Shown here piece by piece: positions 3,884 to 58,870 of a DNA stretch of 64,000 nucleotides. Position numbers and translations under genes: made by a program. Under the pieces are notes generated by a model. It did no database searches. It was not told where the DNA came from and saw only the letters and a list, made by a program, of their open reading frames with translations. The DNA is taken from IMG/VR virus record IMGVR_UViG_3300046665_000548, positions 124,001-188,000 of that record. One strand, written 5' to 3'. The stretch's first letter is position 1; each line of letters opens with the position of its first letter.

Positions 3884-4172
3884 CGCATGTTGCCTGGACA
3901 CCCTTCCCACGGTCTGCCACGACGTTTCGGGTATCTGATGCGTAATTGCGGCCTATCGTATCGCAACTTTTTAGTTGTCACGAGACCGTGGCAAGACTGG
4001 ACCGAGTTGGGGCCGATCAAGAAACGTCTCGGGATCAAGACCAAATACAAGGTGGAGCCTTGGACACCATCAACGACGACAGTTCGTTGGTGGATCGCGC
4101 TAGTATGCGCATTTTTATTTGGACGTTACCTCTAAACTTGACCATTGGGGATGCATCGCTGTAAATAGAGAC

Positions 4173-4211
4173 ATGCGTAACCCTCGAAACCCAATCTTTG
4201 CTGTCGATTGA
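4173..4211 (+). CDS. putative leader peptide MRNPRNPIFAVD
   Basis: ATG 5 nt after TAAATA (4162-4167); its stop lies in a hairpin (4204-4234) abutting the GAGG SD of the next gene. Confidence 0.55.
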   Translation: MRNPRNPIFAVD

Positions 4212-4242
4212 GCGGACTTTCCCGCTTTAATCGAGGTACATC

Positions 4243-4812
4243 TTGTCTAAGAAAGATTGGCGCAATCTGGGCGCTGTAACTGTTTGCGACTACAACAACC
4301 GTCGCTATCAGTTCAACTCTCTTGCCGAAGCTGCTCGTTACTTTGAACGCTACATCCCCGACCTGAAAAAGGGTCACCTGGGATATGAGCAGTTTGAGAC
4401 GCGTCCCTACCGGCGAGTTTTCATCGGCGGCGATAGCCACGTGTTCTACGACGAACTCGGGCTCACCATTCCTGTGTGGAAAGTTCAGGAAGCCTGCCGC
4501 AACCTGCCCTACGAAGCCCGCAGAAGCCGCTGGAGCCGTTTCCCTGATTACGATCATGCCAAGCACTACCGCAACGGTAGCGTGCCTGGAGTGCGTTGTA
4601 GGCGCTGGCATCGCGGCACTGGATCGCCGCGTCTCCACACTCAGTCGGAGATTCGCGAAAATGACTTTGCGAACAACTACGATGAGGACTGCGCGGAATT
4701 CCAAATCAAAACGCGCGGGCGGCGCTCTAAGCTTCCCCACCAGTGGGACGATCCAATGCGCTCGCGGCGCGGCGACGGATGGAAGCAGCACCGCCACAAT
4801 CAGTGGCGGTGA
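4243..4812 (+). CDS. Arg-rich hypothetical protein (TTG start)
   Basis: GAGG SD at 4233; 189 aa; basic C-terminus LPHQWDD...WK...QWR. Confidence 0.65.
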   Translation: MSKKDWRNLGAVTVCDYNNRRYQFNSLAEAARYFERYIPDLKKGHLGYEQFETRPYRRVFIGGDSHVFYDELGLTIPVWKVQEACRNLPYEARRSRWSRFPDYDHAKHYRNGSVPGVRCRRWHRGTGSPRLHTQSEIRENDFANNYDEDCAEFQIKTRGRRSKLPHQWDDPMRSRRGDGWKQHRHNQWR

Positions 4813-12639: not shown

Positions 12640-12671
12640 TTGACTTTCGAAACATGGTCTGTGTATAAATA
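12640..12671 (+). promoter_or_regulatory. promoter of tRNA cluster 1 (TTGACT -35 overlapping T4-type late box TATAAATA)
   Basis: TTGACT 12640-12645, TATAAATA 12664-12671. Confidence 0.75.
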
Positions 12672-12674
12672 GAA

Positions 12675-12782
12675 ATGTTCGCGGATGGTCCGCGTCAAAA
12701 GGATTCGATACGTAAGATGTCCAGCTTGTTTAACAAACGCTTTTGGCGGCGCGTGCGCGCTGTCTCGGAGGTCGCAAGCTGA
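12675..12782 (+). CDS. attenuator leader peptide MFADGPRQKDSIRKMSSLFNKRFWRRVRAVSEVAS
   Basis: Codon run TTG TTT AAC AAA CGC TTT TGG CGG CGC GTG CGC matches the downstream tRNAs; 3' end overlaps the antiterminator arm (alternative start ATG at 12717). Confidence 0.75.
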   Translation: MFADGPRQKDSIRKMSSLFNKRFWRRVRAVSEVAS

Positions 12783-12813
12783 TCTGACGCTTTCACGTGT
12801 CATCAGGTTACCG

Positions 12814-12850
12814 AAGCCCTCCGAGGAAAATGATTTCCGGAGGGTTTTTT
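12814..12850 (+). terminator. attenuator terminator T1
   Basis: AAGCCCTCC/GGAGGGTTT stem plus T-tract. Confidence 0.8.
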
Positions 12851-12864
12851 CTTGTCTGCTTTGC

Positions 12865-12906
12865 AGAGCCCTCCCTGGAAAATCCTCGGAGGGCTTTTGT
12901 TGTTTT
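12865..12906 (+). terminator. attenuator terminator T2 (duplicate of T1)
   Basis: AGAGCCCTCC/GGAGGGCTTT stem plus TGTTGTTTT. Confidence 0.8.
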
Positions 12907-12939
12907 AGATAGGAGAAATACACGGGCGAATGCCCACAT

Positions 12940-13015
12940 GCTTCTGTAGCTCAGTTGGTAGAGCACTCGACTGAAAATCGGGGTGTCGGCGGTTCGAGCC
13001 CGCCTGGAAGCACCA
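12940..13015 (+). tRNA. tRNA-Phe(GAA)
   Basis: Cloverleaf, loop CT-GAA-AA, encoded CCA. Confidence 0.95.
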
Positions 13016-13031
13016 ATTCAATGCTGGTCAC

Positions 13032-13115
13032 GCGGGCGTGGCGGAATGGTTTAGACGCGCTGGCTTCAAACCCCAGTTCTTCGGAGTGGGGGTTCAAGTC
13101 CCTCCGCCCGCACCA
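13032..13115 (+). tRNA. tRNA-Leu(CAA)
   Basis: Class II, loop TT-CAA-AC, C31-C39 mismatch, A73, CCA. Confidence 0.85.
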
Positions 13116-13130
13116 GCATATACCAAGTTT

Positions 13131-13206
13131 AAGGGTGTAGCTCAATTGGTAGAGCGTCGGTCTCCAAAACCGAAGGTTGCAGGTTCGATGCCTGTCGCCC
13201 TTGCCA
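13131..13206 (+). tRNA. tRNA-Trp(CCA)
   Basis: Loop CT-CCA-AA, G73, CCA. Confidence 0.95.
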
Positions 13207-13207
13207 C

Positions 13208-13284
13208 GGTCTTATAGCTCAACTGGATAGAGCACCTGACTACGAATCAGGAGGTTTCAGGTTCGAGTCCTGATAAGACCGCCA
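13208..13284 (+). tRNA. tRNA-Arg(ACG)
   Basis: Loop CT-ACG-AA, A20, CCA. Confidence 0.95.
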
Positions 13285-13330
13285 CCTTATAGTCCACTTG
13301 GGCGCATCCACGGGGTGCTCTAGGCCGACT

Positions 13331-13405
13331 GGTCCGTTAGCGCAGCGGTAGCGCATTCGCCTTCGAAGCGACTGGTCGGCGGTTCGAATCCGTCACGGAC
13401 CTCCA
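13331..13405 (+). tRNA. tRNA-Arg(TCG), atypical identity elements
   Basis: Loop CT-TCG-AA, U73, no A20, CCA. Confidence 0.85.
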
Positions 13406-13448
13406 AATACGTGAAGGCTACGATAGTGCCAGCGAGACGATTTTTGAT

Positions 13449-13524
13449 GGGCGTATAACTCAGTTGGTAGAGTAGCTGACTCTTAATCAGTTTGTCGCAG
13501 GTTCGAACCCTGCTGCGCCCACCA
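13449..13524 (+). tRNA. tRNA-Lys(CTT)
   Basis: Loop CT-CTT-AA, A73, CCA. Confidence 0.95.
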
Positions 13525-13535
13525 AAAATCGTTTT

Positions 13536-13622
13536 GAGCCGGTGTCCCGAGTGGCGAAGGGGGCGGACTTTTAATCCGTTGTTGAGAGACCATCGTGGGT
13601 TCGAGTCCCACCCGGCTCCCCA
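13536..13622 (+). tRNA. tRNA with TTT (Lys) anticodon in a class II, Tyr-like body
   Basis: GAGCCGG/CCGGCTC acceptor, loop CT-TTT-AA, 15-nt variable region, C73, CCA. Confidence 0.8.
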
Positions 13623-13673: not shown

Positions 13674-14213
13674 ATGTTTTCTTGTGATGTTTGCTCTAAA
13701 GATTTTGCCACTTATCGCGGCTTAAACGGACACAAAAGACTCCATGGAGAATCCAGGGGGACGTATGTTGAAGGCTCTAGAGTTGGCGTTGGAGGGAAGA
13801 AACCGTTTAGACAAAACAAACCGTGCCAACGGTGCGGTCAAGAGTCTTTGAACAGCAAATACTGTTCGAATAAGTGTCAGAACGCTTATGAAAAAAGCTC
13901 TTTGATTGAGGACTGGCTGAACGGAAAAGACTCAGGTCTAGCTGCGGGCAACCGTCTGAAGAAATCAATACGTGATCATCTTCTTGCAGAAGCAGAATAC
14001 AAGTGCTCTTCATGCGGTTGGGACAAGATCAATCCAAAGAGCGGAAAGACTCCGTTAGAGATAGATCACATCGACGGAAATTCGGACAATTGCGTGAAAG
14101 ATAACCTAAGGGTCTTGTGCCCTAACTGTCATTCTCTGACGCCCACATATCGGGCGTTAAATTACGGTCGCGCAAATAAAGGTAGACTAAGATACTCTCG
14201 CCTGTGTAAATAG
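13674..14213 (+). CDS. HNH homing endonuclease with N-terminal C2H2 zinc finger
   Basis: CDVC...H-x3-H, LEIDHIDGN...NLRVLCPNCH; inserted within the tRNA cluster. Confidence 0.9.
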   Translation: MFSCDVCSKDFATYRGLNGHKRLHGESRGTYVEGSRVGVGGKKPFRQNKPCQRCGQESLNSKYCSNKCQNAYEKSSLIEDWLNGKDSGLAAGNRLKKSIRDHLLAEAEYKCSSCGWDKINPKSGKTPLEIDHIDGNSDNCVKDNLRVLCPNCHSLTPTYRALNYGRANKGRLRYSRLCK

Positions 14214-14220
14214 GGGTATT

Positions 14221-14296
14221 GGCCGGTTAGCTCAGCGGTAGTAGCGTTTCCTTTACATGGAAAATGTCGGGAGTTCGATCCTCTCACCGGCTACCA
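14221..14296 (+). tRNA. tRNA-Val(TAC)
   Basis: Loop TT-TAC-AT, A73, CCA. Confidence 0.9.
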
Positions 14297-24807: not shown

Positions 24808-25066
24808 GTTTGGCTATCGTTAATTTTGAGCACGATTCTCTAAATAGTTTTGTGCCTAGACGACCGCAAACAAGATTTTCTCGATTTATGGTTCACCTTC
24901 GCGGCGCAATGCGTGCCGCTAAGGTGGCCTTCTGCGTTATCGCGGCCTCCGTGGTCCTTTATCGGATCATCTTCACTGAGATCGATATGGCCGAAGCGAT
25001 AACCTCGCTACTTTCGGTCATTGCGGCGATGAACTAAAATAATTCACGTCAAACATGATTTTCTCG

Positions 25067-25098
25067 TTGACATCGAAATAACACCTGTGTGATAAATA
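25067..25098 (+). promoter_or_regulatory. promoter of tRNA cluster 2
   Basis: TTGACA 25067-25072 and TAAATA 25093-25098. Confidence 0.75.
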
Positions 25099-25103
25099 AA
25101 ACC

Positions 25104-25178
25104 ATGAACAAGAATGTCACAACAACCGTCGTTATTATTACGACCGTACGAAGCGGGAGCTTCGAACGAACGATGTGA
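25104..25178 (+). CDS. attenuator leader peptide MNKNVTTTVVIITTVRSGSFERTM
   Basis: 11 consecutive Thr/Val/Ile codons; the 3' half forms the antiterminator 5' arm. Confidence 0.9.
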   Translation: MNKNVTTTVVIITTVRSGSFERTM

Positions 25179-25202
25179 CGCGAGTTCATCAGTTCAGTTT
25201 CG

Positions 25203-25233
25203 AAACTCCCAGGGAAACCTCGGGAGTTTTTTT
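25203..25233 (+). terminator. attenuator terminator directly before tRNA-Ile
   Basis: AAACTCCC-AGG-GAAA-CCT-C-GGGAG-TTTTTTT. Confidence 0.85.
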
Positions 25234-25308
25234 GTGCTTGTAGCTCAGTGGTAGAGCGCTCGGCTGATAACCGAGAGGTCGGAGGTTCGAGCCCTCCCAG
25301 GCACACCA
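25234..25308 (+). tRNA. tRNA-Ile(GAT)
   Basis: Loop CT-GAT-AA, CCA. Confidence 0.95.
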
Positions 25309-25325
25309 CATTTTTTGGAGGGAAG

Positions 25326-25523
25326 ATGAAGATCAGCGCGTTAGAACTACGACTCGCTGAGGCGAGAGAACGATTTGGTGATCTAGATGTCTACGTTGGA
25401 GAGGCAAGCTCTCAGCTTCGATCTCGTATCGACGTGAACGTGGATAGCGCCATCGCCAAAGGCGAAGACGAAACGGGTGAACGAAAAATCTGCATCGTCC
25501 AGGCTTATGTCATTTTCTCCTGA
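25326..25523 (+). CDS. small hypothetical protein within the tRNA cluster
   Basis: GGAGG SD, 65 aa. Confidence 0.6.
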   Translation: MKISALELRLAEARERFGDLDVYVGEASSQLRSRIDVNVDSAIAKGEDETGERKICIVQAYVIFS

Positions 25524-25547
25524 CTAAATTATTGAGTGAAATGGAAT

Positions 25548-25622
25548 GCTGGTGTAGCACAGCGGTAGTGCAGTCGCTTCGTAAGCGAAAGGTCGGGAGT
25601 TCAATCCTCTCCACCAGCACCA
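25548..25622 (+). tRNA. tRNA-Thr(CGT)
   Basis: Loop TT-CGT-AA, CCA. Confidence 0.93.
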
Positions 25623-25632
25623 TTTTCTCAAC

Positions 25633-25707
25633 GCCGGTTTAGCTCAGCGGTAGAGCAGCGGTTTTGTAAACCGAAGGTCGGGAGTTCAATCCTCTCAACC
25701 GGCACCA
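25633..25707 (+). tRNA. tRNA-Thr(TGT)
   Basis: Loop TT-TGT-AA, CCA. Confidence 0.93.
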
Positions 25708-25715
25708 CACGTTTA

Positions 25716-25790
25716 GCTGACTTAGCACAGTGGTAGTGCACCTCATTGGTAATGAGGAGGTCGCCGGTTCGAACCCGGCAGTCAGCACCA
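25716..25790 (+). tRNA. tRNA-Thr(GGT)
   Basis: Loop TT-GGT-AA, CCA. Confidence 0.95.
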
Positions 25791-25791
25791 C

Positions 25792-25866
25792 GGGAACATA
25801 GCTCAGCGGTAGAGCGTCTGCTCGACATGCAGAATGTCCAAGGTTCGATTCCTTGTGTTCCCACCA
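25792..25866 (+). tRNA. tRNA-Val(GAC) with C33
   Basis: Loop TC-GAC-AT, CCA. Confidence 0.9.
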
Positions 25867-33398: not shown

Positions 33399-33476
33399 AT
33401 GAAGAAGTTAGCCGTTCAGTTTTTGCGACTTATGAACCCGTCCGCCTTGGCGGCCGGGAACGATTTAGCGCACTGA
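33399..33476 (+). CDS. putative leuS leader peptide MKKLAVQFLRLMNPSALAAGNDLAH
   Basis: TAAATA 5 nt upstream; 5 Leu codons (TTA, TTG, CTT, TTG, TTA); followed by an SD-sequestering hairpin. Confidence 0.7.
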   Translation: MKKLAVQFLRLMNPSALAAGNDLAH

Positions 33477-33485
33477 CGGCATGCT

Positions 33486-33516
33486 CTCAAGAGTGTGTCG
33501 CCCACACACTTTTGAG
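33486..33516 (+). promoter_or_regulatory. 13-bp hairpin sequestering the leuS Shine-Dalgarno
   Basis: CTCAAGAGTGTGT/ACACACTTTTGAG includes GAG of GAGGA. Confidence 0.7.
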
Positions 33517-33522
33517 GACGAA

Positions 33523-34785
33523 ATGGAAAACGATTTTTACTGCACCGTCATGTTTCCGTATCCATCTGGAGCGGGACTGCACCTGGGCCATTACTACAAT
33601 TACGCGATCACCGACTCGTACTGCCGATGGCTGCGCTATCGCGGGCAGTCTGTGTTTCAACCATTCGGCTATGATGCCTTTGGTCTGCCCGCTGAGAACT
33701 ATGCACGCGAGATTGGCGGCGATCCGGCCGATGTGACGCGAGCGAACATTGCGCGTTTTCGCGTGCAAATGGATCGCATGAACACGCAGTTCGATGAGCG
33801 GCTGGTAACATGCGAGCCGCCATATGTGAAATGGACGCAGTGGCTGTTTCTGCGAATGCAGGAGCGCGGACTGGCTTACAAGGCTTGGGGTCGAGTGAAC
33901 TGGTGCCCATCGTGCGAAACCGTACTGGCTAATGAGCAGGTCCAAGACGGCCACTGCGAGCGCTGTAGTTCGGCCGTAGACCCACGAGAGATGAACCAGT
34001 GGTATTTCCGGATCACCGACTACAAAGACCGCCTGATTGCCGGACTGGATCATATCGATTATCCGGAAGGCACAAAGAAAATGCAGCGCGTCTGGCTGGA
34101 GAACCTGCAAGATTGGTGCGTGTCTCGTCAACGTAAATGGGGCTGCCCGATCCCGGTAGAGGGAGAAACGGATACCCTGGATACGTTCGTGGACTCGTCA
34201 TTTTACTTTCTGCGGTATCTGACCGATTCGACGGAGGAGTTTTTGCCAGAGGGTGCGTTCAAACAGGTCGATCTGTACGTGGGCGGGGCCGAGCATGCCT
34301 GTATGCATCTGATCTACGCGCGCTTTGTGCATATGTTTCTGTATGATATCGGCGTCGTTCCAGTTGAGGAGCCATTCAAAAAGGTCATTCACCAGGGCAT
34401 GATCACCAAGGATGGGGCAAAGATGTCCAAGTCCAAGGGAAACGCGGTCAACGCGGATGATTATGATGCGGATGAACTGCGGTTCTACCTGATGTTCCTG
34501 GGACATTACTTCGACGGTGGTGATTGGTCCGATCAACACATCACTGGCGTTCGTCGCTTTTTCGGCAAGATGAAACGTTGGATGAGCGAACCCGGCTCGG
34601 ATCAAATCGACACGTCTAAGTTCGAGGAACTGATCGACCGCAACACGCGAGCGTTCAAGTTCAACAAGGTGGTAAGCGGCTTCATGGAGTTCTATAATCA
34701 GAACAAATCACGTAAGCCTGATGCGGAAAGCTGTCAGAAAATCGAGACACTACTGCGAATATTCGCACCTGGATTCGGTAACTAA
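33523..34785 (+). CDS. leuS: leucyl-tRNA synthetase, minimal (no CP1 editing domain)
   Basis: MFPYPSGAGLHLGH, GYDAFGLPAEN, WCPSCETVLANEQV, DWCVSRQRKWG, DTFVDSS, KMSKS; only 420 aa. Confidence 0.9.
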   Translation: MENDFYCTVMFPYPSGAGLHLGHYYNYAITDSYCRWLRYRGQSVFQPFGYDAFGLPAENYAREIGGDPADVTRANIARFRVQMDRMNTQFDERLVTCEPPYVKWTQWLFLRMQERGLAYKAWGRVNWCPSCETVLANEQVQDGHCERCSSAVDPREMNQWYFRITDYKDRLIAGLDHIDYPEGTKKMQRVWLENLQDWCVSRQRKWGCPIPVEGETDTLDTFVDSSFYFLRYLTDSTEEFLPEGAFKQVDLYVGGAEHACMHLIYARFVHMFLYDIGVVPVEEPFKKVIHQGMITKDGAKMSKSKGNAVNADDYDADELRFYLMFLGHYFDGGDWSDQHITGVRRFFGKMKRWMSEPGSDQIDTSKFEELIDRNTRAFKFNKVVSGFMEFYNQNKSRKPDAESCQKIETLLRIFAPGFGN

Positions 34786-34834
34786 TGTCTGTGAAATTTT
34801 TGAAATACGTGCCGCGATGGCCAAAGCGGGTTGT

Positions 34835-34863
34835 TAGCCGGGCTCCTTTTTGGAGCCCGGTTA
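34835..34863. terminator. 12-bp hairpin downstream of leuS
   Basis: TAGCCGGGCTCC/GGAGCCCGGTTA. Confidence 0.5.
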
Positions 34864-35145
34864 CTCATCCAAGGTTACTGAGTAAAGGTTGGGGGCCGTT
34901 TCGTTCGGAATGGTATTCGTTCTGCTCTCGGCATCCATATCATGACGAGACCTGCGGCGCGTGTCACGCCGGAACATGGAATAACATCTATAAGCTGTGG
35001 ATTTCCAACAAAGTCCACGACTGGGCGTATCCGCTATGGTATTGGTGGAAGAACTCAAGGATATCGAAATGACTTTTGATCTCGGAATACCTCCATTCAC
35101 CCGCGCGCGGCATCGGGCCGCACCACCTCGCGGGTGGAGGATGAC

Positions 35146-35391
35146 ATGGCTAAACGAGCAGAACGACGACACCACCGTGCCCGCCTAAAGCAAGCGCGAA
35201 GCGGCTATCATGGAGCCGGAAAATATTGGACTCCAGACGAAAAGGTACTTTCACGTTGGGTTGACACACCGTGCCCATGTTCGTGCATGGGATGTGGCAA
35301 TCCGCGCCGTACTTCTTGGTCTACCGGAGAACGACTAACGATCCAGGAGCGCCGGTTCTTTTGCGCACCGATTGATCCCATGGAGATGTAA
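35146..35391 (+). CDS. small basic Cys-rich protein
   Basis: MAKRAERRHHRARLK...CSCMGCGNPRR...LTIQERR; GGAGG SD within a hairpin. Confidence 0.7.
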   Translation: MAKRAERRHHRARLKQARSGYHGAGKYWTPDEKVLSRWVDTPCPCSCMGCGNPRRTSWSTGERLTIQERRFFCAPIDPMEM

Positions 35392-36193
35392 TGCAGATCG
35401 AGAACCGCATTAGTATCATCAAGCGTCGCATCAGCGATCTTGAGCAACGATCAGAAGAAAATGGCGATCATGTTTACCAGTTAAGGGATGATATCTTGTC
35501 TGGAAAGATCAGCCAAAGTGAATTTACCGCTAGACTAGATCGGGTTCGCGAAGTACATTCCAGTCTTCGTGTCGAGCTTGATGCTTTGGCGCGCGAAGCT
35601 GGAGCGTTACGTGGAGCAATTACATCGTGATTATCTAGATATCTTGGCGAAGAAGTTTCGCGCCGAGGTAATGATCGTAACTGCCGATGCTTTTATTGAT
35701 AGGCATCTCGACACTGGTCTGACAATCGAAGACATGGCGACGCGGTTGAACACCAGCGCCGATGCGATTCGCCGTATGTTCGACATGAATGACCCCGCTA
35801 CCAAACGGGGTCTCGGTCTGTTGTCCGATATGTGCGCCGCTTTGGGATGCCGCCCGGTCGTTACCATTCGCGATATCGGCAGTCCTCCTGAAATCACTAC
35901 AGATCGCGAAACTCGTACCGGGGACCATCTGCTCCAAGTGGCGAAATCGCTCGGGTGGCCCGACGATGGCGAGGGCGCGCTTGAGTTCGTTATGCGGAGG
36001 ACACGTGAGGTTGCGCTCGAAGATGCAGCAGCCACGACCGCGCTCCGAGAGATCGCGTCTATCGGTGCCCAAATCACTGATCCGGACAACGTATACGGGG
36101 TTCAGATGACGAACCTTGCCATCGCCGCGTTGGCGCGTCCTCCTGGTTCACAAAACACTTGACGTTTTTCTAATTCCTGTCATTGGATACGGC

Positions 36194-38002
36194 ATGCACG
36201 AATATCGTTCCCATACTTGCGACTCGCTGTCGCCATCACAAATCGATCAGACAGTTCGCCTGTCCGGTTGGTGTCACCGTATCCGTAACCATGGTGGTAT
36301 CCTTTTCATCGATCTTCGCGATCACTACGGCATCACGCAGTGCGTGATCGATCCCGCAGTTCTCCCTCAGGCTGAAAGCCTTGGTGAAGAATGGGTGATT
36401 CGCGTCGATGGTACAGTGCGATTTCGACCCCCAGGTACCGAGAATTCAAAACTCTCGACAGGAGAGATCGAGGTAAAGGTAGCTTCGCTTGACGTGCTCG
36501 GACCGGTCGTCGGGGCGCTGCCGATGCCTGTCGCGCATCTCCATTCCACGAGCGACGGTACGTTGCAGGAAGTCGAATATCCAGAAGACCTTCGGTTGAA
36601 ATATCGATTCTTGGACCTTCGCCGCGAACGGCTGCACGAGAACATGATGAAGCGAATGAAAATCATTCGCTGGCTGCGTCATCGCATGGAGGACGAAGGC
36701 TTCTTCGAATTCCAGACGCCCATCCTTACCGCATCGTCCCCAGAAGGGGCGCGAGACTTTCTCGTGCCTGCTCGGTTGCATCCAGGCAAGTTCTACGCGT
36801 TGCCGCAGGCTCCGCAGCAGTTCAAGCAACTTACCATGGTTGCTGGCTTCGACCGATACTTTCAAATTGCGCCATGCTTCCGTGATGAAGCTGCACGTTC
36901 AGATCGGTCACCGGGCGAGTTCTATCAACTCGACATCGAAATGAGTTTCGTAACTCAGGAAGACGTGTTTCGGGTTGTCGAACCGACGATTCGAGATTTG
37001 TTCAAGGAGTTCGGCGGCGACAAAGCCATCACCGAGACCTTCCCGCGTATTCCGTACAAGGAAGCGTTGCTGCGTTTTGGTACCGATAAGCCAGACCTGC
37101 GTAACCCTCTGCGTATTGTGGACGTGTCCAAGGCTCTCCAAGCCGACGACATGACACTCGCCCCTTTCAAGAAAGGCGTCGGCAGAGCTATCGTTGTGCC
37201 AGCCGCGATGCTGGCCGGGAAGTCGCGCAAGTGGTTCAAGGATATGGAAGGCTGGGCACAATCCCAAGGCGCGGCCGGTTTAGGATATCTGAGCGTCATG
37301 CTGACCGATGGTCGCGTGAGCTTCGCTGGACCGCTTGCTAAGTTTTTCGGTGAGCAATCTAGCGAGTTGGTTCGCGTCGCCGCCGACACAATCTTTGACG
37401 AGGGAGATGTCATTTTCTTCGCCGTTGGCGAGGAAAGCTCCACCATCAAATTCAGTGGACTGCTTCGTACAAAGCTCGGAGAGGAGCTTGGTCTGATCGA
37501 GCAAGACCGGTTCGAGTTCTGCTGGATCGTGGATTATCCCATGTTCGAGTGGAATTCTGACGAGAAGAAGATCGACTTCTCCCACAACCCCTTCTCGATG
37601 CCTCAGGGCGGCCTGGAGGCGCTTGAGGGCGATCCATTAGGTGTTCTTGCCTATCAGTACGATATCGTCTGTAATGGCATCGAGCTTTCGTCTGGTGCCA
37701 TCCGGAACCATCGACCAGATATCATGGAGAAGGCGTTCTCCATCGCTGGCTACGACAAGGAGGTGTTGGAAGAAAAGTTCGGCGGCATGCTGAATGCATT
37801 CCGTTGCGGAGCACCACCGCATGGTGGAATTGCACCGGGTATCGACCGCATGGTTATGCTTCTGTGCGAAGCTGAGAACCTGCGCGATGTCGTGCTGTTC
37901 CCAATGAACCAGAAAGGACAAGACCTGATGATGGGCGCTCCGTCTTCAGTAACTGCAAAGCAACTTGACGAGTTGAATATCAGGATCATTCCGAGGAAAT
38001 AA
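36194..38002 (+). CDS. aspS: aspartyl-tRNA synthetase (non-discriminating type)
   Basis: [50 protein letters not shown]. Confidence 0.95.
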
Positions 38003-38652: not shown

Positions 38653-38697
38653 ATGAATTCCACTCTCACCTACTTTGAGGCGATACGCACGCTCTAA
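38653..38697 (+). CDS. putative leader peptide MNSTLTYFEAIRTL with an ATA codon
   Basis: TAAATA 6 nt upstream; ATA at 38683; hairpin and two AUA-type tRNAs directly downstream. Confidence 0.6.
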   Translation: MNSTLTYFEAIRTL

Positions 38698-38714
38698 CCC
38701 CGAAAGGGGCTTTT

Positions 38715-38806
38715 GGGCGTGACCTTAGGTAGGGCGAGGGATTTATATCCCCTTTCAGGCGGTAGATGACCGTTCGGCTGTTGAGGTTCGAATCCTCCCG
38801 CGCTCA
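38715..38806 (+). tRNA. atypical tRNA-Ile(TAT) with long variable arm
   Basis: GGGCGTG/CGCGCTC acceptor, loop TT-TAT-AT, GGTTCGAATCC T-loop; reduced D-arm, ends ACTA rather than ACCA. Confidence 0.65.
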
Positions 38807-38817
38807 CTACATTTTTC

Positions 38818-44864: not shown

Positions 44865-46151
44865 ATGCATGACATTAACTACATTCGCGATAATCCAGAT
44901 GCTTTCGATGCTGGTCTGGCGGCGCGCGGCCTCAAATCTCAGTCCGAAATATTGATCAACATCGATCAGTCGCGTCGGCACGCCCTGACCGAGCTTCAGC
45001 AAAGACAATCCAAGCGCAACGAGTTGTCGGCGCAAATTGGCGCGGCGATGAAGGCTGGTCAACGCGATGAGGCCGAACGCCTTAAGACAGAGGTGGTAAC
45101 GCTTAAGCACGCAATCGAAGATTGGACCGGTCGCGCTGCAACGTCTCAGACCATACTAACGCATGAACTGGAGCGTATCCCGAATCTACCGGCCGCCGAT
45201 GTGCCCGTTGGCAAGGATGAAACTGCAAATCATTTGGAAACAGTTTGGGAGCCGGACGGTGGGAGGCGCGTGATCGCCAATCCGAAGCCTCACTGGGAGC
45301 TAGGCGAGGCCCTGGGGATGATGGACTTCCAAGCTGGCACGATGCTGGCTGGGCCGAGAAGCACTGTTCTCCGTGGTCCTCTGGCCAAGCTAGCGCGGGG
45401 TCTCGGCAACTGGATGATCGACACTATGACGTTGGAGGGATACAGCGAGGTCGATGTGCCTTGTATCGTCAACGGTGAGATCATGCACGGCACAGGCCAA
45501 CTCCCCAAGTTCGAGGCCGACGCTTATCGGCTGAACGATGCCGACCAATATCTGATCCCCACGGCCGAAGTACCTCTCACCAATCTTGTACGAGACCAGA
45601 TCGTAGATGAGGATGCGCTTCCTCTTCTGTATACGGCTCTGACCCCTTGCTTTCGAAAAGAAGCAGGATCGGCTGGCCGCGACGTGCGTGGCATGATGCG
45701 CCAGCACCAGTTCATGAAATGCGAAGTCGTGATGATCACTCAGCCAGAGTTTTCTGAGATCGACCACATGAAAATGCTCATGCATGTAGGCAACCTCCTC
45801 AAACGACTTTTCCTACCTCACCGGTACATGAAGTTGTGCAGCGGGGACATGGGCTTTTCGGCAAAGAAGACTTACGATTTCGAGGTTTGGCTTCCGAGCC
45901 AAGATGCGTATCGTGAGATTTCTTCCGTGTCGAATTGCGGAGATTTCCAGGCTAGGCGAATGAACGCTCGCTTCCGCAAAAAGGATGGCTCGATCCACTA
46001 TCTGCACACTCTCAATGGGTCTGCTATGGCTGTCGGCCGGACGTTGATTGCCGTCATGGAGAACTACCAGAACGACGACGGATCGATCACGATCCCAGAC
46101 GTTCTCATTCCCTATGTTGGTTTCGGTAAAATCGAAGCGGGCATGCGCTGA
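44865..46151 (+). CDS. serS: seryl-tRNA synthetase
   Basis: GTGQLPKF, YLIPTAEVPL, FRKEAGSAGRDVRGMMRQHQF, EISSVSNCGDFQARR, TLNGSAMAVGR. Confidence 0.96.
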   Translation: MHDINYIRDNPDAFDAGLAARGLKSQSEILINIDQSRRHALTELQQRQSKRNELSAQIGAAMKAGQRDEAERLKTEVVTLKHAIEDWTGRAATSQTILTHELERIPNLPAADVPVGKDETANHLETVWEPDGGRRVIANPKPHWELGEALGMMDFQAGTMLAGPRSTVLRGPLAKLARGLGNWMIDTMTLEGYSEVDVPCIVNGEIMHGTGQLPKFEADAYRLNDADQYLIPTAEVPLTNLVRDQIVDEDALPLLYTALTPCFRKEAGSAGRDVRGMMRQHQFMKCEVVMITQPEFSEIDHMKMLMHVGNLLKRLFLPHRYMKLCSGDMGFSAKKTYDFEVWLPSQDAYREISSVSNCGDFQARRMNARFRKKDGSIHYLHTLNGSAMAVGRTLIAVMENYQNDDGSITIPDVLIPYVGFGKIEAGMR

Positions 46152-54822: not shown

Positions 54823-55095
54823 TTAGCCCCATCGGAGCTTAAAGAGTGCGGCGTCACGTGCCCGTCTGAAATAGAAACTCGATTTGTACCATGTCCAGTT
54901 AAATCCTTCATCGTACATATCGTGAAAGATTCCACCATCCTGATAATGGATCGATCCGGTAATTGGAGTTTTAAAGATATGCTCACCCCACTCGCCAGCC
55001 TCCTGTAGAGGTCCGAATTCATTGAGCGTTATGACGTGAGGTAAGCGCTTCTTAAGCCAATCATCAAGCTCAGACTGTTTAACCCGCGTCGGCAT
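54823..55095 (-). CDS. paralog family protein (FYFRRARDAALFKLRWG)
   Basis: Shared C-terminal motif. Confidence 0.65.
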   Translation of the reverse strand: MPTRVKQSELDDWLKKRLPHVITLNEFGPLQEAGEWGEHIFKTPITGSIHYQDGGIFHDMYDEGFNWTWYKSSFYFRRARDAALFKLRWG

Positions 55096-55903
55096 GGAAC
55101 ACCGGATCGGCGTCTTCGAAGATCATTTCCACTCGGTTTTTTATCTTTAGTATCTTTGGGAAGTGGAACGTCCGTAGACGACTTCTCACAACGGGACCAG
55201 TCGGCCGTCTTGCCTCTGGAATGAGAACTAATTTCTCAGCAGGAAGCTCAGCCTCGAACACCTCTGAACGAATGAACGTCCCGCGTTTGAACGCTTCGGG
55301 ATAATCCTCGAACGTCACACCCTTCTCGCTCAGCAATTCAACCATTCCCTGACGAGATACGCCATTAAGCCGCTTGTGGCTCAAATGATGATGTGCGGCC
55401 ATCGAAACGGAATTGCGTTCGGCGTCGAGCACTCTCCAGAGAATTGCATTGGCAGCTTCTTCCTTTGACGGAAGCTCAAACACCCGAGCGTCGAAATGCG
55501 GAAGCTTGTCAGCATTCTTCGCGAACTGTTCGCTGCTTGCTAGCACAGCCTGATTGAAACGGGCCGTCGCCATGCCAGCAAGGATCGAGCATAGCTTCTG
55601 CACCTTGCCGCCAAACATCAGTTCCTGAGCCGGGTTCTCGCCATCGAGGTACCAAAGCAGAGAAATTTCATCCGACTGCGTATAGCCGATAACCGCATTT
55701 GTTTTCTGAACCAAATAAGATGCGGTCTCAACCATGCAGGCGTGAAACTCGGCGTCGAACGGGCGGACCATTCCCTTAGTGAACTTAGAGAAACCTCGGC
55801 CGTCAATTCGAGCATAGAGCGGCTGCCGCGCATCGAAACGAAGGGAGGTCTGCGCCGACTCGTACTGTTTCATACGGTCGCCCAAATCATCTTTAAACAT
55901 CAC
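55079..55903 (-). CDS. tRNA(His) guanylyltransferase Thg1-like protein
   Basis: RMKQYE, RIDGRGFSKFT, GYTQSDEISL, FGGKVQK, FDARVF. Confidence 0.93.
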   Translation of the reverse strand: MMFKDDLGDRMKQYESAQTSLRFDARQPLYARIDGRGFSKFTKGMVRPFDAEFHACMVETASYLVQKTNAVIGYTQSDEISLLWYLDGENPAQELMFGGKVQKLCSILAGMATARFNQAVLASSEQFAKNADKLPHFDARVFELPSKEEAANAILWRVLDAERNSVSMAAHHHLSHKRLNGVSRQGMVELLSEKGVTFEDYPEAFKRGTFIRSEVFEAELPAEKLVLIPEARRPTGPVVRSRLRTFHFPKILKIKNRVEMIFEDADPVFHADAG

Positions 55904-56568
55904 TGTCCTCTCGGAGGAGACCTTTTCGTTTCAGTCCGGCAACCTCGTCGTCAGGCACGAATCTTTTCATCCCGTTGATGAACGTGACTTTCGTGTAGCT
56001 GGTTGTCGTCCCACCCGTGTAAAGATCAAGCTCGATCTCGCGCTTGATCTCGTCTAGTACACGCGACCGTTCTTCGTTGAGTTCAACGACAAGCTTTTCA
56101 TTCAGCCGGAGTGCTTCAACGGCAGCAAGAAACTCACTCACGTTGCCTTCATTACGAGGATCAGCGTGTAGGGCTTCGACAGCCTTCCGGTGCCGCTCAC
56201 GCGCCTTCTCGCCATCAACCTTCCACGCTTTCGTGTAGGCTTCGTTAGCAAGGTCGAAACGTTTTCGCTCGTCTTTGGTCTGGGCTCGCATTACTTTACT
56301 CGAAAGCATGTATGATAGGGACGAACTAGCTGAAAATACTCGTCCTTTTTGGGCTCAGATGGCTTCGCGGACTTTTCATCTTTTTCCGCGTCATCTTCTT
56401 CTTCGGTAGCGTGCTCTTGGGCTATACCCGTGTGAGTCTTTACCAAAGCGAGGCCCGCTGCTTCGCACAAGTCCTTGGAAGCGAAACCGTCGAAACGATC
56501 TCGCTCCAAGCGCACGTCAGCACCACTCGATTGCTGGATGAAGAGCAGCGTGAATAGGAGCGTCCACA

Positions 56569-56988
56569 TTAGACGAGCGCATCCTTGACTACCTGCGACG
56601 CAACCTTGCCGTCATAACGACCACCGTAGTTGTCCTTCAGGTGCTTCATCACGATGCCCATGTTCGCGCTGGGGTTCTCTCGGCGGATGACGAGAACGAC
56701 TTCACGAAGCTCATCCTGGCTCATCTGCTGCGGCAGATAAGCTTCGAGAATTTTGATTTCGGCCGCGATCTTGTCCGAGGGGGCAAGACCCATGGTCTCG
56801 CGGGCATTCTTGAGGAACTTTTGAACCATCGCGATAGCCTCCTCCTCGGTGGTCTCGCGATTACCCGCGTCCTTTCCGACGCGATCCGCTTCGCCCTTCA
56901 GGGCGGTAAGCAGACCGATGGCGGTCTCGTCCTTTGCCTTGCGAGCCTGGAGTTGATCGGCGCGAATGCGCTCCATCAGCGTCGTCAT
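56569..56988 (-). CDS. GatB/YqeY domain protein
   Basis: ARKAKD, EIKILEAYLPQQMS, MGIVMKHLK...G.YDGK. Confidence 0.9.
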   Translation of the reverse strand: MTTLMERIRADQLQARKAKDETAIGLLTALKGEADRVGKDAGNRETTEEEAIAMVQKFLKNARETMGLAPSDKIAAEIKILEAYLPQQMSQDELREVVLVIRRENPSANMGIVMKHLKDNYGGRYDGKVASQVVKDALV

Positions 56989-57030
56989 GATACGGTCCTC
57001 TATATTAAAGAATGCGTGTGTACCAGAAAA

Positions 57031-57573
57031 TCAGCTTTTGGCAACATTGTTTCGTGAATTTGGTGCAGAAGAACCACTGCACAGGAGTGGTACCAGAGGG
57101 CGCTTCGCCAGATTGCTGTTGGCATATCGGTTATCGTGAGAGACCTCTTCGCCAAGCCAGTCCGGCGTAACAAAGTCTTCATCCTCTCCCCCAAGCTCGA
57201 TTTCGGCCGTCACAAGCCCGTCGTGCGCACCTTCGAACACATCCACATGCCAGACATGCGAGGGATCATCTTTAACCAACACGTGATATCGCGTCTTGGA
57301 AAGAACGTACTCGCACAATTTGAGCATTTCGTTCGCGTCATCGTATGGCACCTCATATTCGTACTCGGCGCGAGATACCCCGGATGTCTTGCCCTTGACT
57401 GTCAAAAATCCCTGACGCCGGTCGCCGTCCACGACTGTACGAACGCGCACGACCGATGGCTTGGTTTGAAGGTAGCCCTGGCAGAGCTTTTCGCCGTTGG
57501 CGCTTTTCCAGCAGCCAATCTCCCGCCAGCCATCACTCTTAACTAGGAATTTTCTCTCAATCTCTACAGGCAT
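57031..57573 (-). CDS. CYTH-domain triphosphate tunnel metalloenzyme
   Basis: EIERKFLV, QGYL, VRVR, TVKG, EYEY, AEIEL. Confidence 0.92.
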   Translation of the reverse strand: MPVEIERKFLVKSDGWREIGCWKSANGEKLCQGYLQTKPSVVRVRTVVDGDRRQGFLTVKGKTSGVSRAEYEYEVPYDDANEMLKLCEYVLSKTRYHVLVKDDPSHVWHVDVFEGAHDGLVTAEIELGGEDEDFVTPDWLGEEVSHDNRYANSNLAKRPLVPLLCSGSSAPNSRNNVAKS

Positions 57574-57620
57574 TCATTTTCCCCAACTAAAGTAAGTTCT
57601 GATCCCTCCTAAATAGCAGG

Positions 57621-58469: not shown

Positions 58470-58870
58470 GCATTCTCTCCATTGGGTGACATATTTGTGG
58501 TTCGATTCCACGATGCCGTCAAGGACCCCTGAACTAAATATAACCGTGCAGATCATTGGAACAAATCGTCGCGAAGGAATTGACTGGGTTCAAGATAAAC
58601 TCGGTCCTATGTGCCCGCGCACCACGGCCGAAACAACTTTCTTGGGGCTTCTCAAGGAAGGTCAGATCATCGGCTGCAAATCCGCATTCATTCTAGCGGA
58701 AGACATGGGAGACGATGATCTTCGCAACATCGCTACCGATGAAGTAAAAAAGCGAATGTCCGAACAGGACAAGAAGCGACGTAAAGCACCTCGCGCGAAT
58801 AACAATTTCGCAGTAAAGCGAGACGGCAGCGAGGACGATGGTTCTTTGATCACCGTCCAAGTGCCAAACC

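What the first reader, a model, noticed from the sequence alone, without database searches (positions are those of the whole stretch)
25067..25866. Leader-peptide transcription attenuator controlling a phage tRNA operon (Thr/Val/Ile)
Seen: a promoter, then a 24-codon ORF (25104-25178, MNKNVTTTVVIITTVRSGSFERTM) whose codons 5-15 are GTC ACA ACA ACC GTC GTT ATT ATT ACG ACC GTA. A strong intrinsic terminator (25203-25233) ends 0 nt before the first tRNA. The five downstream tRNAs are Ile(GAT), Thr(CGT), Thr(TGT), Thr(GGT) and Val(GAC); they read 10 of those 11 codons and every tRNA has a cognate codon. GGGAGCTTCGAA (25155-25166, in the leader's last codons) pairs 11/12 with TTCGAAACTCCC (25199-25210, terminator 5' arm), closing a long hairpin capped by a GCGA tetraloop, which makes a mutually exclusive antiterminator. 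Established: this is the geometry of thrL/ilvL/pheM attenuators. Inference: here the output is tRNA genes, so the phage would sense slow decoding of specific codons (starvation or host anticodon nucleases) and transcribe its own isoacceptors, a self-limiting feedback loop. I know of no described leader-peptide attenuator for phage tRNA arrays, but could not search.
Basis: partly seen in the sequence, partly recalled or inferred. Interest (0 to 1): 0.97.

Follow-up and report, generated by a model that had tools for sequence, protein, structure and literature searches.

The report
Leader-peptide attenuators controlling phage tRNA genes
A 607-kb phage puts a tiny reading frame and a transcription stop signal in front of its tRNA genes, and the frame is built from the very codons those tRNAs read, so the phage probably makes its own tRNAs only when ribosomes decode those codons slowly; the same design turns up in other large phages and seems not to have been described.

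Summary

The 24-codon ORF at 25104-25178 holds the best match in the whole 64-kb window, on both strands and in all frames, to the codons read by the five tRNAs that follow it. A strong terminator abuts tRNA-Ile. A -25 kcal/mol antiterminator forms if a ribosome sits on the Thr/Val/Ile codons and is masked if the ribosome reaches the stop codon.

A second attenuator of the same design (ORF 12675-12782, tandem terminators) precedes the Phe/Leu/Trp/Arg/Lys array of the same window.

The phage has no close relatives, so this leader's own conservation could not be tested. A survey of 354 tRNA arrays found the same design elsewhere: a short ORF, a terminator and tRNAs, with the ORF's codons matching the downstream tRNAs. 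It occurs in unrelated viral contigs and in two GenBank huge-phage genomes. One example is a seven-Gln-codon leader before three tRNA-Gln genes.

Among the 23 arrays with this geometry, 10 match at p<0.1, against 10 of 230 mismatched controls.

I found no description of this in Rfam or in the searched literature. There is no expression evidence. I rate it a new variant of leader-peptide attenuation, and probably a recurrent class.

The parts
25051..25066 (+). 16-nt motif AAACAWGATTTTCTCG directly upstream of the -35 hexamer. A second exact copy lies at 24868-24883. Role unknown; it could be an UP element or a regulator site.
   Evidence: two exact copies, 7 matches at up to 3 mismatches against 1.2 expected.
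25067..25096 (+). Putative sigma-70-type promoter: TTGACA, an 18-nt spacer, then GATAAA preceded by TGT. The ATG follows 7 nt after the -10 hexamer and has no Shine-Dalgarno, so the leader mRNA may be leaderless.
   Evidence: Read. The promoter at 12640 has the same layout. The consensus scan did not list it. This part is inferred.
25104..25178 (+). Leader ORF of 24 codons plus TGA.
   Evidence: It is the best of 427 short ATG-ORFs in the window for the downstream tRNA set, with corrected p of 2.2e-7.
25116..25148 (+). Regulatory codon run (codons 5-15): Val, Thr x3, Val x2, Ile x2, Thr x2, Val. Ten codons are read by the five operon tRNAs. The eleventh (GTA) is read by tRNA-Val(TAC) at 14221.
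25128..25144 (+). Small hairpin GTCGT/ACGAC inside the codon run (-4.9 kcal/mol). A translating ribosome melts it.
25149..25164 (+). Hairpin 1:2 (CGAAGC, GGGA loop, GCTTCG; -10.6 kcal/mol). It ties up part of the antiterminator 5' strand when no ribosome is nearby.
25155..25210 (+). Antiterminator (2:3): 25155-25166 pairs with 25199-25210 around an inner stem capped by GCGA. Energy is -25.0 kcal/mol. It sequesters the terminator 5' arm.
25203..25233 (+). Intrinsic terminator (3:4): 11-pair stem with one bulge and a GAAA loop, followed by T7. Energy is -17.1 kcal/mol. It ends at the base before tRNA-Ile.
25234..25308 (+). tRNA-Ile(GAT), the first gene after the terminator.
25326..25523 (+). 65-codon ORF with a strong Shine-Dalgarno, lying inside the tRNA operon. 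Function unknown.
   Evidence: no Pfam or PHROG match.
25548..25866 (+). tRNA-Thr(CGT), tRNA-Thr(TGT), tRNA-Thr(GGT) and tRNA-Val(GAC).
12640..12669 (+). Second attenuator, putative promoter: TTGACT, an 18-nt spacer, then TATAAA preceded by TGTG. The ATG follows 5 nt after the -10 hexamer.
   Evidence: Inferred.
12675..12782 (+). Second leader ORF (35 codons; alternative start at 12717). Fourteen codons are cognate to the array, and all seven tRNAs are covered.
   Evidence: It ranks first of 427 short ORFs, p of 5.6e-4.
12726..12758 (+). Second regulatory run: Leu(TTG), Phe, Asn, Lys, Arg, Phe, Trp, Arg, Arg, Val, Arg. Nine of 11 codons are cognate, or 10 of 11 if tRNA-Val(TAC) is counted, which makes it the unique maximum of the window.
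12763..12826 (+). Second antiterminator: CTCGGAGG in the last leader codons pairs with CCTCCGAG, the 5' arm of terminator 1. Energy is -29.6 kcal/mol including inner stems.
12813..12907 (+). Tandem intrinsic terminators T1 (12813-12850, -20.0 kcal/mol) and T2 (12863-12907, -21.8 kcal/mol). When the antiterminator holds the T1 5' arm, the T1 3' arm pairs with the T2 5' arm, so both terminators are disabled by relay.
12940..13622 (+). tRNA array: Phe(GAA), Leu(CAA), Trp(CCA), Arg(ACG), Arg(TCG), Lys(CTT) and an 87-nt tRNA with anticodon TTT.
13674..14296 (+). HNH homing-endonuclease gene (13674-14213) followed by tRNA-Val(TAC) at 14221-14296. This is probably the original end of the same array.

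Best explanation
Both elements are ribosome-mediated (leader-peptide) transcription attenuators whose regulated genes are tRNA genes.

Proposed sequence of events at 25067-25233:

- Transcription starts at the promoter. The short ORF is translated at once, probably as a leaderless mRNA.
- If aminoacyl-tRNAs for ACA, ACC, ACG, GTC, GTT and ATT are plentiful, the ribosome runs to the stop codon at 25176.
- There it covers 25155-25166, so the antiterminator cannot form. The terminator at 25203-25233 forms instead, and the transcript ends one base before tRNA-Ile.
- If any of those codons is decoded slowly, the ribosome stays within codons 5 to about 13. Segment 25155-25166 is then free as segment 25199-25210 emerges.
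- The -25 kcal/mol antiterminator forms and RNA polymerase reads into tRNA-Ile, the 65-codon ORF, three tRNA-Thr genes and tRNA-Val.

The products are the tRNAs that read the sensing codons, so the loop limits itself.

The second element works the same way through a five-segment relay that disarms two terminators in tandem.

What is shown: the codon match, the pairings, the geometry and the recurrence in other phages. What is inferred: promoter use, translation of the ORF, termination efficiency and the direction of the response.
For: Codon match:
- It is the unique maximum of the window at all window lengths tested.
- It is unique in 3.39 million background windows.
- It ranks 1 of 427 short ORFs.
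- All five tRNAs have one to three Watson-Crick or wobble codons in the ORF.

Structure:
- The leader folds better than all 200 shuffles, z = -4.1.
- Energies are 1:2 -10.6, 2:3 -25.0 and 3:4 -17.1 kcal/mol.
- With the 3' arm of the terminator not yet made, a ribosome with its A site at 25119-25137 leaves the whole antiterminator formed. A ribosome at the stop codon removes it.
- The antiterminator duplex beats 2000 of 2000 shuffles.
- There is no room for a separate promoter between the terminator and tRNA-Ile, so tRNA-Ile can only be made by readthrough.

Replicate in the same genome:
- The ORF at 12675-12782 has 14 of 35 codons cognate and all seven tRNAs covered. Only 70 of 45,982 stop-free segments do as well.
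- It ranks 1 of 427 short ORFs.
- Its antiterminator is free with the A site at or before 12747 and masked at the stop codon.
- The two terminators are linked by a relay of pairings.
- Its codon set (Phe, Leu, Trp, Arg, Lys) fits no biosynthetic pathway. It fits only the tRNA array.

Class-level evidence:
- Of 354 arrays, 23 have the geometry short ATG-ORF, hairpin plus T-run, tRNA.
- In those 23, the codon match reaches p<0.1 in 10, p<0.01 in 5 and p<0.001 in 4. With mismatched tRNA sets the figures are 10, 2 and 0 of 230.
- In L261, eight consecutive codons correspond one-to-one with the eight downstream tRNAs.
- In L288, 11 of 12 codons cover all seven tRNAs.
- L361 is a further example.
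- LR745206.1 has a seven-Gln-codon leader and terminator before three tRNA-Gln genes, and a Pro/Gln/Asp run before a Pro, Asp x4, Pro, Gln x3 array.
- L261 and L062 share a 23-tRNA array order and a conserved promoter-ATG stretch. Their leader bodies do not align, yet both carry the codons of the first tRNA block.

Context: the window is a translation island with AspRS, SerRS, a LeuRS-like protein, Thg1, YqeY and a ribosome hibernation factor.
Against: - There are no expression, ribosome-occupancy or 3'-end data.
- The -10 hexamer lacks the conserved final T, and the consensus scan missed both promoters.
- Neither leader ORF has a Shine-Dalgarno, so translation rests on the leaderless or A-rich-leader assumption.
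- No relative of this phage was found, so there is no conservation or compensatory-change test for this particular leader.
- Without any ribosome, the co-transcriptional fold also gives the antiterminator. The default state would then be readthrough unless hairpin 1:2 wins kinetically.
- The second leader is only moderately significant on each single measure: corrected p of 7e-3 in the survey and duplex 51 of 2000.
- In the other phages the antiterminator complementarity is weak or absent: L261 40/1000, L288 44/1000, L062 and L289 not significant.
- Extra tRNA cannot relieve a stall caused by amino-acid shortage.
Confidence: 0.75

Rival explanations
1. This is an ordinary amino-acid starvation attenuator of the thrL or ilvL kind. 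It senses Thr, Val and Ile supply and regulates the downstream protein genes (the 65-codon ORF and the 205-residue protein). The tRNAs are passengers.
For: The chassis is the same as thr and ilv leaders, and stalling cannot by itself tell uncharged tRNA from absent tRNA. A protein ORF lies inside the operon.
Against: The first gene after the terminator is a tRNA. Codon choice follows the anticodons present: ACA, ACC and ACG match the three Thr isoacceptors. The second leader and those of L261, L288, L361 and L373 use amino-acid mixtures with no common pathway, and each mixture equals its downstream tRNA set.
Confidence: 0.08
2. The short ORF with its terminator is an independent small gene (a micropeptide or small RNA) with a constitutive, leaky terminator. 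The codon match only reflects the general fit between a phage's tRNAs and its codon usage.
For: The promoter, ORF and terminator form a complete unit. Phage tRNAs are known to follow phage codon usage (own knowledge).
Against: Using the true tRNA set, none of 426, 42, 91, 54 and 37 other short ORFs in the same loci reaches the leader's score, and real genes in 1.7 Mb do not either. Mismatched sets taken from other phage arrays give 10 of 230 at p<0.1, against 10 of 23 for the true sets. The antiterminator overlaps the last codons in both window leaders.
Confidence: 0.07
3. The direction is reversed, or the coupling is general. Leader translation reports overall translation capacity rather than specific codons, or ribosomes reaching the end of the ORF promote readthrough.
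For: Without a ribosome the antiterminator is the favoured co-transcriptional fold, so some effect of translation as such is expected.
Against: The stop codon lies 25 nt before the terminator stem, too far for a terminating ribosome to melt it. That ribosome instead covers the antiterminator 5' strand. General capacity sensing does not explain codon sets that track each array.
Confidence: 0.06
4. It is coincidence: a hydrophobic mini-ORF and an inverted repeat (GTCGT/ACGAC, perhaps a protein-binding site) happen to lie before a terminator.
For: Part of the codon run is a palindrome, which reduces the number of independent codons.
Against: See the statistics, the replicate at 12675, and about ten further loci with other amino-acid sets.
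Confidence: 0.03

Closest known systems
E. coli thr operon leader (thrL) and ilv leaders (ilvL, ivbL): multivalent leader-peptide attenuators
   Same: Short ORF with a run of Thr/Ile or Ile/Leu/Val codons. Alternative 1:2, 2:3 and 3:4 pairings. An intrinsic terminator before the first structural gene. A ribosome stalled on the run favours the antiterminator. (Established knowledge; the principle is reviewed in PMC1183508.)
   Different: Those leaders control amino-acid biosynthetic enzymes and use one pathway's amino acids. Here the output is tRNA genes, and the codon set equals the downstream anticodon set, down to one codon per tRNA in L261. There is no sequence or structure homology: no Thr_leader or other Rfam leader hit. 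The ORF lacks a Shine-Dalgarno.
pheM leader of pheST (phenylalanyl-tRNA synthetase operon)
   Same: Leader-peptide attenuation of a component of the translation apparatus by decoding of the cognate codons (established knowledge). It is the nearest in logic.
   Different: It regulates a synthetase rather than tRNAs, uses a single amino acid, and belongs to a cell rather than a phage.
his operon leader (Rfam His_leader RF00514)
   Same: A relay of several mutually exclusive hairpins. The second element (12763-12907) works through five segments, and it gives a weak sub-threshold His_leader match (21.1 bits, E 0.24, gathering score 49).
   Different: The match is below threshold, there are no His codons, and the output is tRNAs.
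T-box riboswitches
   Same: They sense tRNA status by codon-anticodon recognition in a leader and switch between a terminator and an antiterminator.
   Different: A T-box binds uncharged tRNA directly without translation, has conserved Stem I and T-box sequence, and controls synthetase and amino-acid genes. No T-box hit was found here.
Leaderless polycysteine short ORFs acting as Cys-responsive attenuators in mycobacteria (bioRxiv 10.1101/834739)
   Same: A leaderless short ORF at the 5' end of an operon whose decoding speed sets downstream expression. Here the ATG lies 5-7 nt after the -10 hexamer at both window promoters, and about 6-9 nt after it in L261, L062 and L288.
   Different: Those have a single amino acid, metabolic genes as output, and sit in a cellular genome. 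Their mechanism is not a classical terminator switch.

Membership tests
Ribosome-mediated (leader-peptide) transcription attenuator | Short translatable ORF at the 5' end of the transcript, upstream of the regulated genes | tested here: inconclusive
   ORFs are present at 25104-25178 and 12675-12782. Neither has a Shine-Dalgarno. The ATG lies 5-7 nt after the putative -10, so translation would have to be leaderless. That is plausible but not shown.
Ribosome-mediated (leader-peptide) transcription attenuator | Cluster of regulatory codons whose decoding reports the sensed aminoacyl-tRNAs | tested here: met
   10 of 10 consecutive cognate codons, the unique maximum of the window and of 3.39 million background windows. 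The second leader has 9-10 of 11.
Ribosome-mediated (leader-peptide) transcription attenuator | Intrinsic terminator between the leader ORF and the first regulated gene | tested here: met
   25203-25233, -17.1 kcal/mol plus T7. T1 and T2 at 12813-12907, -20.0 and -21.8 kcal/mol.
Ribosome-mediated (leader-peptide) transcription attenuator | Mutually exclusive antiterminator that is free when the ribosome stalls on the regulatory codons and masked when it reaches the stop codon | tested here: met
   Masked co-transcriptional folds. Duplex against shuffles: 0 of 2000 for leader 1 and 51 of 2000 for leader 2. Relay in leader 2.
Ribosome-mediated (leader-peptide) transcription attenuator | Readthrough rises when the cognate aminoacyl-tRNAs are limiting | not testable with these tools
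   This needs reporter, Term-seq or in-vitro assays.
Rfam amino-acid operon leaders (Thr_leader, Leu_leader, His_leader, Trp_leader) | Match to the family covariance model at or above its gathering score | tested here: not met
   No leader family at gathering threshold in the window. None appears even at E up to 10 in 25040-25260. Only His_leader at 21.1 bits against 49 in 12800-12902.
T-box riboswitch | Stem I with specifier loop and conserved T-box antiterminator sequence (Rfam T-box model) | tested here: not met
   No T-box match.
Proposed class: codon-matched leader ORFs before phage tRNA arrays | Short ORF, then hairpin plus T-run, then tRNA array, with the ORF enriched in codons read by the array's tRNAs | tested here: met
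   Window leader 1 has p of 2.2e-7 under the same test as L288, L261, L361 and L062. Class enrichment is 10 of 23 against 10 of 230 controls.

The most novel reading that the evidence does not exclude
Codon-matched leader ORFs are a widespread, unrecognised switch by which large phages watch the decoding of particular codons and turn on replacement tRNAs only when the host's tRNAs fail. Such failure could come from host shut-off or from anticodon-nuclease and other tRNA-depleting defences. On this reading the leader is a built-in sensor for tRNA-targeting immunity and the tRNA array is an inducible counter-defence.
Probability: 0.3. Interest if true: 0.95.

Novelty: new variant of a known kind. 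Interest (0 to 1): 0.9.

Why it matters
Phage tRNA genes have long been discussed as codon-usage helpers or as spares against host tRNA cleavage. How they are regulated is largely unknown.

A leader ORF that lists the codons of the tRNAs behind it would be a direct feedback controller of tRNA supply. This is a regulatory logic I found described for no tRNA gene in the library searched.

- It makes the question 'when does a phage need its own tRNAs?' testable with a simple reporter.
- It gives a sequence rule for finding tRNA operon boundaries in huge-phage genomes.
- It provides natural, modular sensors of codon-specific ribosome stalling.
- Very different amino-acid sets recur in unrelated phages, which suggests convergent or repeatedly rebuilt design.

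Tried and rejected
Relatives of this phage:
- blastn against 50,697 phage records found only tRNA hits.
- Peptide-seeded scans of IMG/VR with two flanking proteins found only the contig itself.
- Homologues of the 205-residue protein are Bradyrhizobium-type chromosomal genes with no synteny.
- The nearest homologue of the radical-SAM protein is 40% identical, on a 19.8-kb contig without tRNAs.
- A 30-nt tRNA-Ile pattern found only the contig itself in IMG/VR.
- Walking the contig 9 kb beyond each window end found no further tRNAs.

Survey false positives:
- L026 is a membrane-protein gene.
- L050, L083, L054 and others lie in longer coding frames.
- L311 is a repeat protein.
- The Ser-Ser tRNA modules found with a tRNA-Ser pattern have plain promoters and no leaders.
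- Brevundimonas jumbo phage Gurke, found through its SerRS, has no tRNAs near that gene.
- No cultured relative of the L261 or L361 arrays was found.

Other points:
- In an unselected sample of arrays there is no general excess of codon matches, so the design is a minority feature.
- The single tRNAs of the window (Met, Arg-CCT, Arg-TCT) have no such leader.
Full report
**Origin and context.** The window is positions 124001-188000 of IMGVR_UViG_3300046665_000548, a 607,744-bp viral contig that is also JGI 3300046665 Ga0495661_0000003. It is 52% G+C.

The window carries 16 tRNA genes. It also encodes an aspartyl-tRNA synthetase, a seryl-tRNA synthetase, a 434-residue class-I synthetase with LeuRS-like motifs, Thg1, YqeY, a ribosome hibernation factor, a NUDIX hydrolase and a radical-SAM protein. 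An HNH homing endonuclease sits inside a tRNA array. The finding therefore lies in the translation island of a very large phage.

**Checking the observation.** Every item is in the sequence.
- TTGACA lies at 25067-25072. After an 18-nt spacer comes GATAAA at 25091-25096, preceded by TGT.
- The ATG is at 25104 and has no Shine-Dalgarno.
- The 24-codon ORF ends with TGA at 25176-25178.
- An 11-pair stem with one bulge and a GAAA loop is followed by seven T and ends at 25233.
- tRNA-Ile(GAT) starts at 25234.
- The four other tRNAs and their anticodons are confirmed by ARAGORN and Rfam.
- The 11/12 complementarity of 25155-25166 with 25199-25210 is real, and the hairpin it closes has a GCGA tip.

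The tool's consensus scan lists neither this promoter nor the terminator. The -10 hexamer ends in A, which may be why the promoter was missed. The promoter is therefore plausible but unproven. The terminator is clear from the folding: -17.1 kcal/mol.

**Is the codon match more than chance?** I defined the codons read by the five tRNAs with standard wobble rules, giving eight codons that make up 12.3% of all trinucleotides in the window.
- For windows of 6, 8, 10, 11, 12 and 14 codons, on both strands and in all frames, every maximum lies at 25101-25131. The score is 10 of 10; the best elsewhere is 8 of 11.
- In 3.39 million windows from 184 loci (1.7 Mb), the condition '10 of 10 cognate and all five tRNAs represented' is met once, by this site.
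- Among 427 short ATG-ORFs of the window, the leader ranks first. Its corrected p is 2.2e-7, and the next best is 7.4e-3.
- Each tRNA has its own codons in the ORF: ATT twice; ACG twice; ACA twice; ACC twice; GTC twice and GTT once.
- The eleventh codon of the run, GTA, is read by tRNA-Val(TAC) at 14221.

**Structure and geometry.**
- The leader (25100-25240) folds at -47.9 kcal/mol, against -33.0 +/- 3.6 for shuffles (z = -4.1).
- The elements are hairpin 1:2 at 25149-25164 (-10.6), antiterminator 2:3 at 25155-25210 (-25.0) and terminator 3:4 (-17.1).
- I folded the transcript as it exists before the terminator's 3' arm is made, masking everything up to 14 nt beyond the ribosomal A site. With the A site at 25119-25137 the complete antiterminator forms. 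At 25143-25146 only part of it forms. At the stop codon none of it forms.
- The duplex between the leader and the terminator 5' arm (-16.3 kcal/mol) is stronger than in 2000 of 2000 dinucleotide shuffles.
- There is no space for another promoter between the terminator and tRNA-Ile, so tRNA-Ile can only be expressed by reading through this terminator.

**A second attenuator in the same window.** Upstream of the array Phe(GAA), Leu(CAA), Trp(CCA), Arg(ACG), Arg(TCG), Lys(CTT), (TTT) the layout is the same.
- TTGACT, an 18-nt spacer and TATAAA with TGTG upstream are followed by an ATG five bases later at 12675.
- The ORF has 35 codons and ends at 12782. Two terminators follow (-20.0 and -21.8 kcal/mol).
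- Fourteen of its codons are cognate and all seven tRNAs are represented. That includes the rare TTG and TGG.
- The run at 12726-12758 scores 9 of 11, tied for the top of the window. It scores 10 of 11, the unique top, if tRNA-Val(TAC) beyond the HNH insertion is counted. That inclusion was made after seeing the data.
- The ORF ranks first of 427 short ORFs for its own tRNA set.
- CTCGGAGG in its last codons pairs with the 5' arm of terminator 1. This pairing is free with the A site at or before 12747 and masked at the stop codon.
- When it forms, the 3' arm of terminator 1 pairs with the 5' arm of terminator 2, so one event disarms both.
- On single measures this leader is only moderately significant: corrected p of 7e-3 and duplex 51 of 2000. 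As a replicate of a prior hypothesis it is persuasive.
- Phe, Leu, Trp, Arg and Lys share no biosynthetic pathway. The set makes sense only as the list of tRNAs behind it.

**Relatives.** The phage has none close enough to test conservation of these leaders. The one metagenome scan was wasted on a pattern common in cellular tRNA-Ile.

**The same design elsewhere.** I asked instead whether the design recurs. I collected tRNA loci from IMG/VR with tRNA-based patterns. I scored every region upstream of an array against that array's anticodons. The p-value came from an exact calculation, corrected for the windows tried, with controls that used tRNA sets from other arrays.

In an unselected sample there is no general excess, so most arrays lack the feature. 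Three sites stand far outside the controls. They are window leader 1 (4.6e-6), L288 (1.4e-5) and L261 (5.2e-5). None of 846 controls falls below 1e-4.

Requiring the geometry 'hairpin plus T-run next to the first tRNA, and an ATG-ORF of 8-45 codons ending within 70 nt of the hairpin' leaves 23 of 354 arrays. Their codon-match results are below.

| Threshold | True tRNA sets (of 23) | Mismatched sets (of 230) |
|---|---|---|
| p<0.1 | 10 | 10 |
| p<0.01 | 5 | 2 |
| p<0.001 | 4 | 0 |

Individual cases:
- L261:8279-8359 contains eight consecutive codons that correspond one-to-one with the eight tRNAs that follow: Cys, Leu(TAG), Tyr, Trp, Ser(GCT), Leu(TAA), Phe, Ser(TGA). A strong terminator abuts tRNA-Phe. 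That pattern is unique in 3.39 million windows.
- L288:1878-1967 (minus strand) has 11 of 12 codons covering all of Pro, Glu, Gln, His, Leu, Leu, Arg.
- L361:5439-5507 covers Tyr, Gln, Trp, Asn and Phe before an Asn, Phe, Trp, Tyr, Asn, Gln, Asn array, with a -22.9 kcal/mol terminator.
- L062:228-293 precedes an array with the same 23-tRNA order as L261. The promoter-ATG stretch aligns, but the ORF body and terminator do not. Both ORFs nevertheless carry the codons of the first tRNA block. Codon content is kept while sequence is not, which is what selection on decoding predicts and selection on a peptide does not.
- In each of these loci the leader is the best-scoring short ORF for its own tRNA set.

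**GenBank huge-phage genomes.** In LR745206.1 (635 kb):
- An ORF with seven Gln codons (L373:39412-39462) and a terminator abut three tRNA-Gln genes. Its p is 6.9e-8 and it is the best of 402 short ORFs.
- An ORF with the run Pro, Val, Asn, Pro, Gln, Pro, Gln, Asp, Gln, Asp, Pro (L373:38477-38572) and a terminator precede a Pro, Asp x4, Pro, Gln x3 array (p 1.7e-5).
- An Asn/Leu/Thr/Val/Ile/Arg-rich ORF (L373:19474-19590) and a terminator precede an Asn, Arg, Arg, Leu, Asn, Asn, Val, Ile, Thr, Val array (p 2.6e-3).

LR756501.1 (735 kb) has two weaker cases.

**Limits of the comparative evidence.** Antiterminator complementarity in the other phages is weak: L261 40/1000, L288 44/1000, and L062 and L289 not significant. 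The switch is therefore best documented in the window itself.

**Mechanism.** The best-supported reading is a self-limiting feedback. Slow decoding of the listed codons keeps the ribosome on the run, the antiterminator forms, and the tRNA genes are transcribed. Their products speed decoding, the ribosome then reaches the stop codon, and the terminator forms one base before the first tRNA.
- Shown: the codon-anticodon correspondence, the pairings, the ribosome-position logic and the recurrence.
- Inferred: promoter and start-site use, translation without a Shine-Dalgarno, terminator efficiency and the natural signal. The ATG lies 5-7 nt after the -10 hexamer at both window promoters and about 6-9 nt after it in L261, L062 and L288, which suggests leaderless mRNAs.
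- Extra tRNA helps only if tRNA rather than amino acid is limiting. The likely signal is therefore shortage of host tRNA, from a codon-usage mismatch, host shut-off or tRNA-targeting defences. That last link is speculation.

**Comparison with what is known.** The chassis is classical leader-peptide attenuation, as in the thr, ilv, his, trp and pheM leaders. The principle is described in PMC1183508, and a broad computational survey of attenuators (PMC2965389) does not mention tRNA genes.
- The element is not a member of any Rfam leader family or of the T-box family.
- Leaderless short-ORF attenuators are known in mycobacteria (bioRxiv 10.1101/834739).
- Eight full-text searches found nothing on leader-peptide control of tRNA genes.
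- The huge-phage survey paper does not contain the words attenuation, leader or terminator (PMC7162821).

**Verdict.** I rate it a new variant of a known kind of regulation, probably a recurrent class. My confidence in the mechanism is about 0.75, and interest is high.

Noticed in passing
window 38654-38817: A 14-codon ORF (38654-38698) and a terminator-like hairpin (about 38699-38718) are followed directly by a 93-nt tRNA-like element at 38714-38806. That element has an acceptor stem and a T arm, but ARAGORN does not call it. It gives only a weak tRNA-Sec match (21.5 bits, E 0.05). tRNA-Met(CAT) follows at 38818.
   Followed up: partly
window 13536-13622: The tRNA called Lys(TTT) is 87 nt long and has a long variable arm, a body typical of Leu, Ser or Tyr tRNAs. 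Its Rfam tRNA score is only 49.8 bits. Its amino-acid identity is uncertain.
   Followed up: no
window 33399-33476: A 25-codon ORF with five Leu codons (TTA, TTG, CTT, TTG, TTA) ends 4 nt before the ATG of the 434-residue LeuRS-like synthetase gene (33481-34785). There is no terminator between them. This could be translational coupling or a uORF control of a synthetase.
   Followed up: no
window 4138-4245: A third promoter of the same style (TTGACC ... TGTAAATA) is followed a few bases later by an ATG. That ATG opens a 12-codon ORF, followed by a weak hairpin and then a gene starting at 4243. It may be another leaderless mini-ORF leader.
   Followed up: no
window 24868-24883 and 25051-25066: Two exact copies of AAACAWGATTTTCTCG lie 183 nt apart and bracket a 49-codon membrane-like ORF. 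The second copy touches the -35 hexamer of the leader promoter.
   Followed up: partly
window 33481-38002, 44865-46151, 55079-58556: This is a translation island: a LeuRS-like protein, AspRS, SerRS, Thg1, YqeY, a CYTH protein and a ribosome hibernation factor (S30AE). A distant relative (L091, Logan SRR30952582 contig) shares the radical-SAM, Thg1, YqeY and RNA-ligase genes.
   Followed up: partly
window 13674-14213: An HNH homing-endonuclease gene with a C2H2 zinc finger is inserted between the tRNA array and tRNA-Val(TAC).
   Followed up: yes
L373 39138-39211 and L361 6192-6266: ARAGORN calls tRNAs with four-base anticodons (GTAG and TTTT) inside arrays of other large phages. They could be frameshift-suppressor-like tRNAs or miscalls.
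   Followed up: no
L288 295-332 versus 1822-1858 (locus coordinates): The terminator of the L288 leader is repeated at 95% identity near the second tRNA block (Ala, Lys) of the same contig. No convincing codon-matched ORF was seen there.
   Followed up: partly
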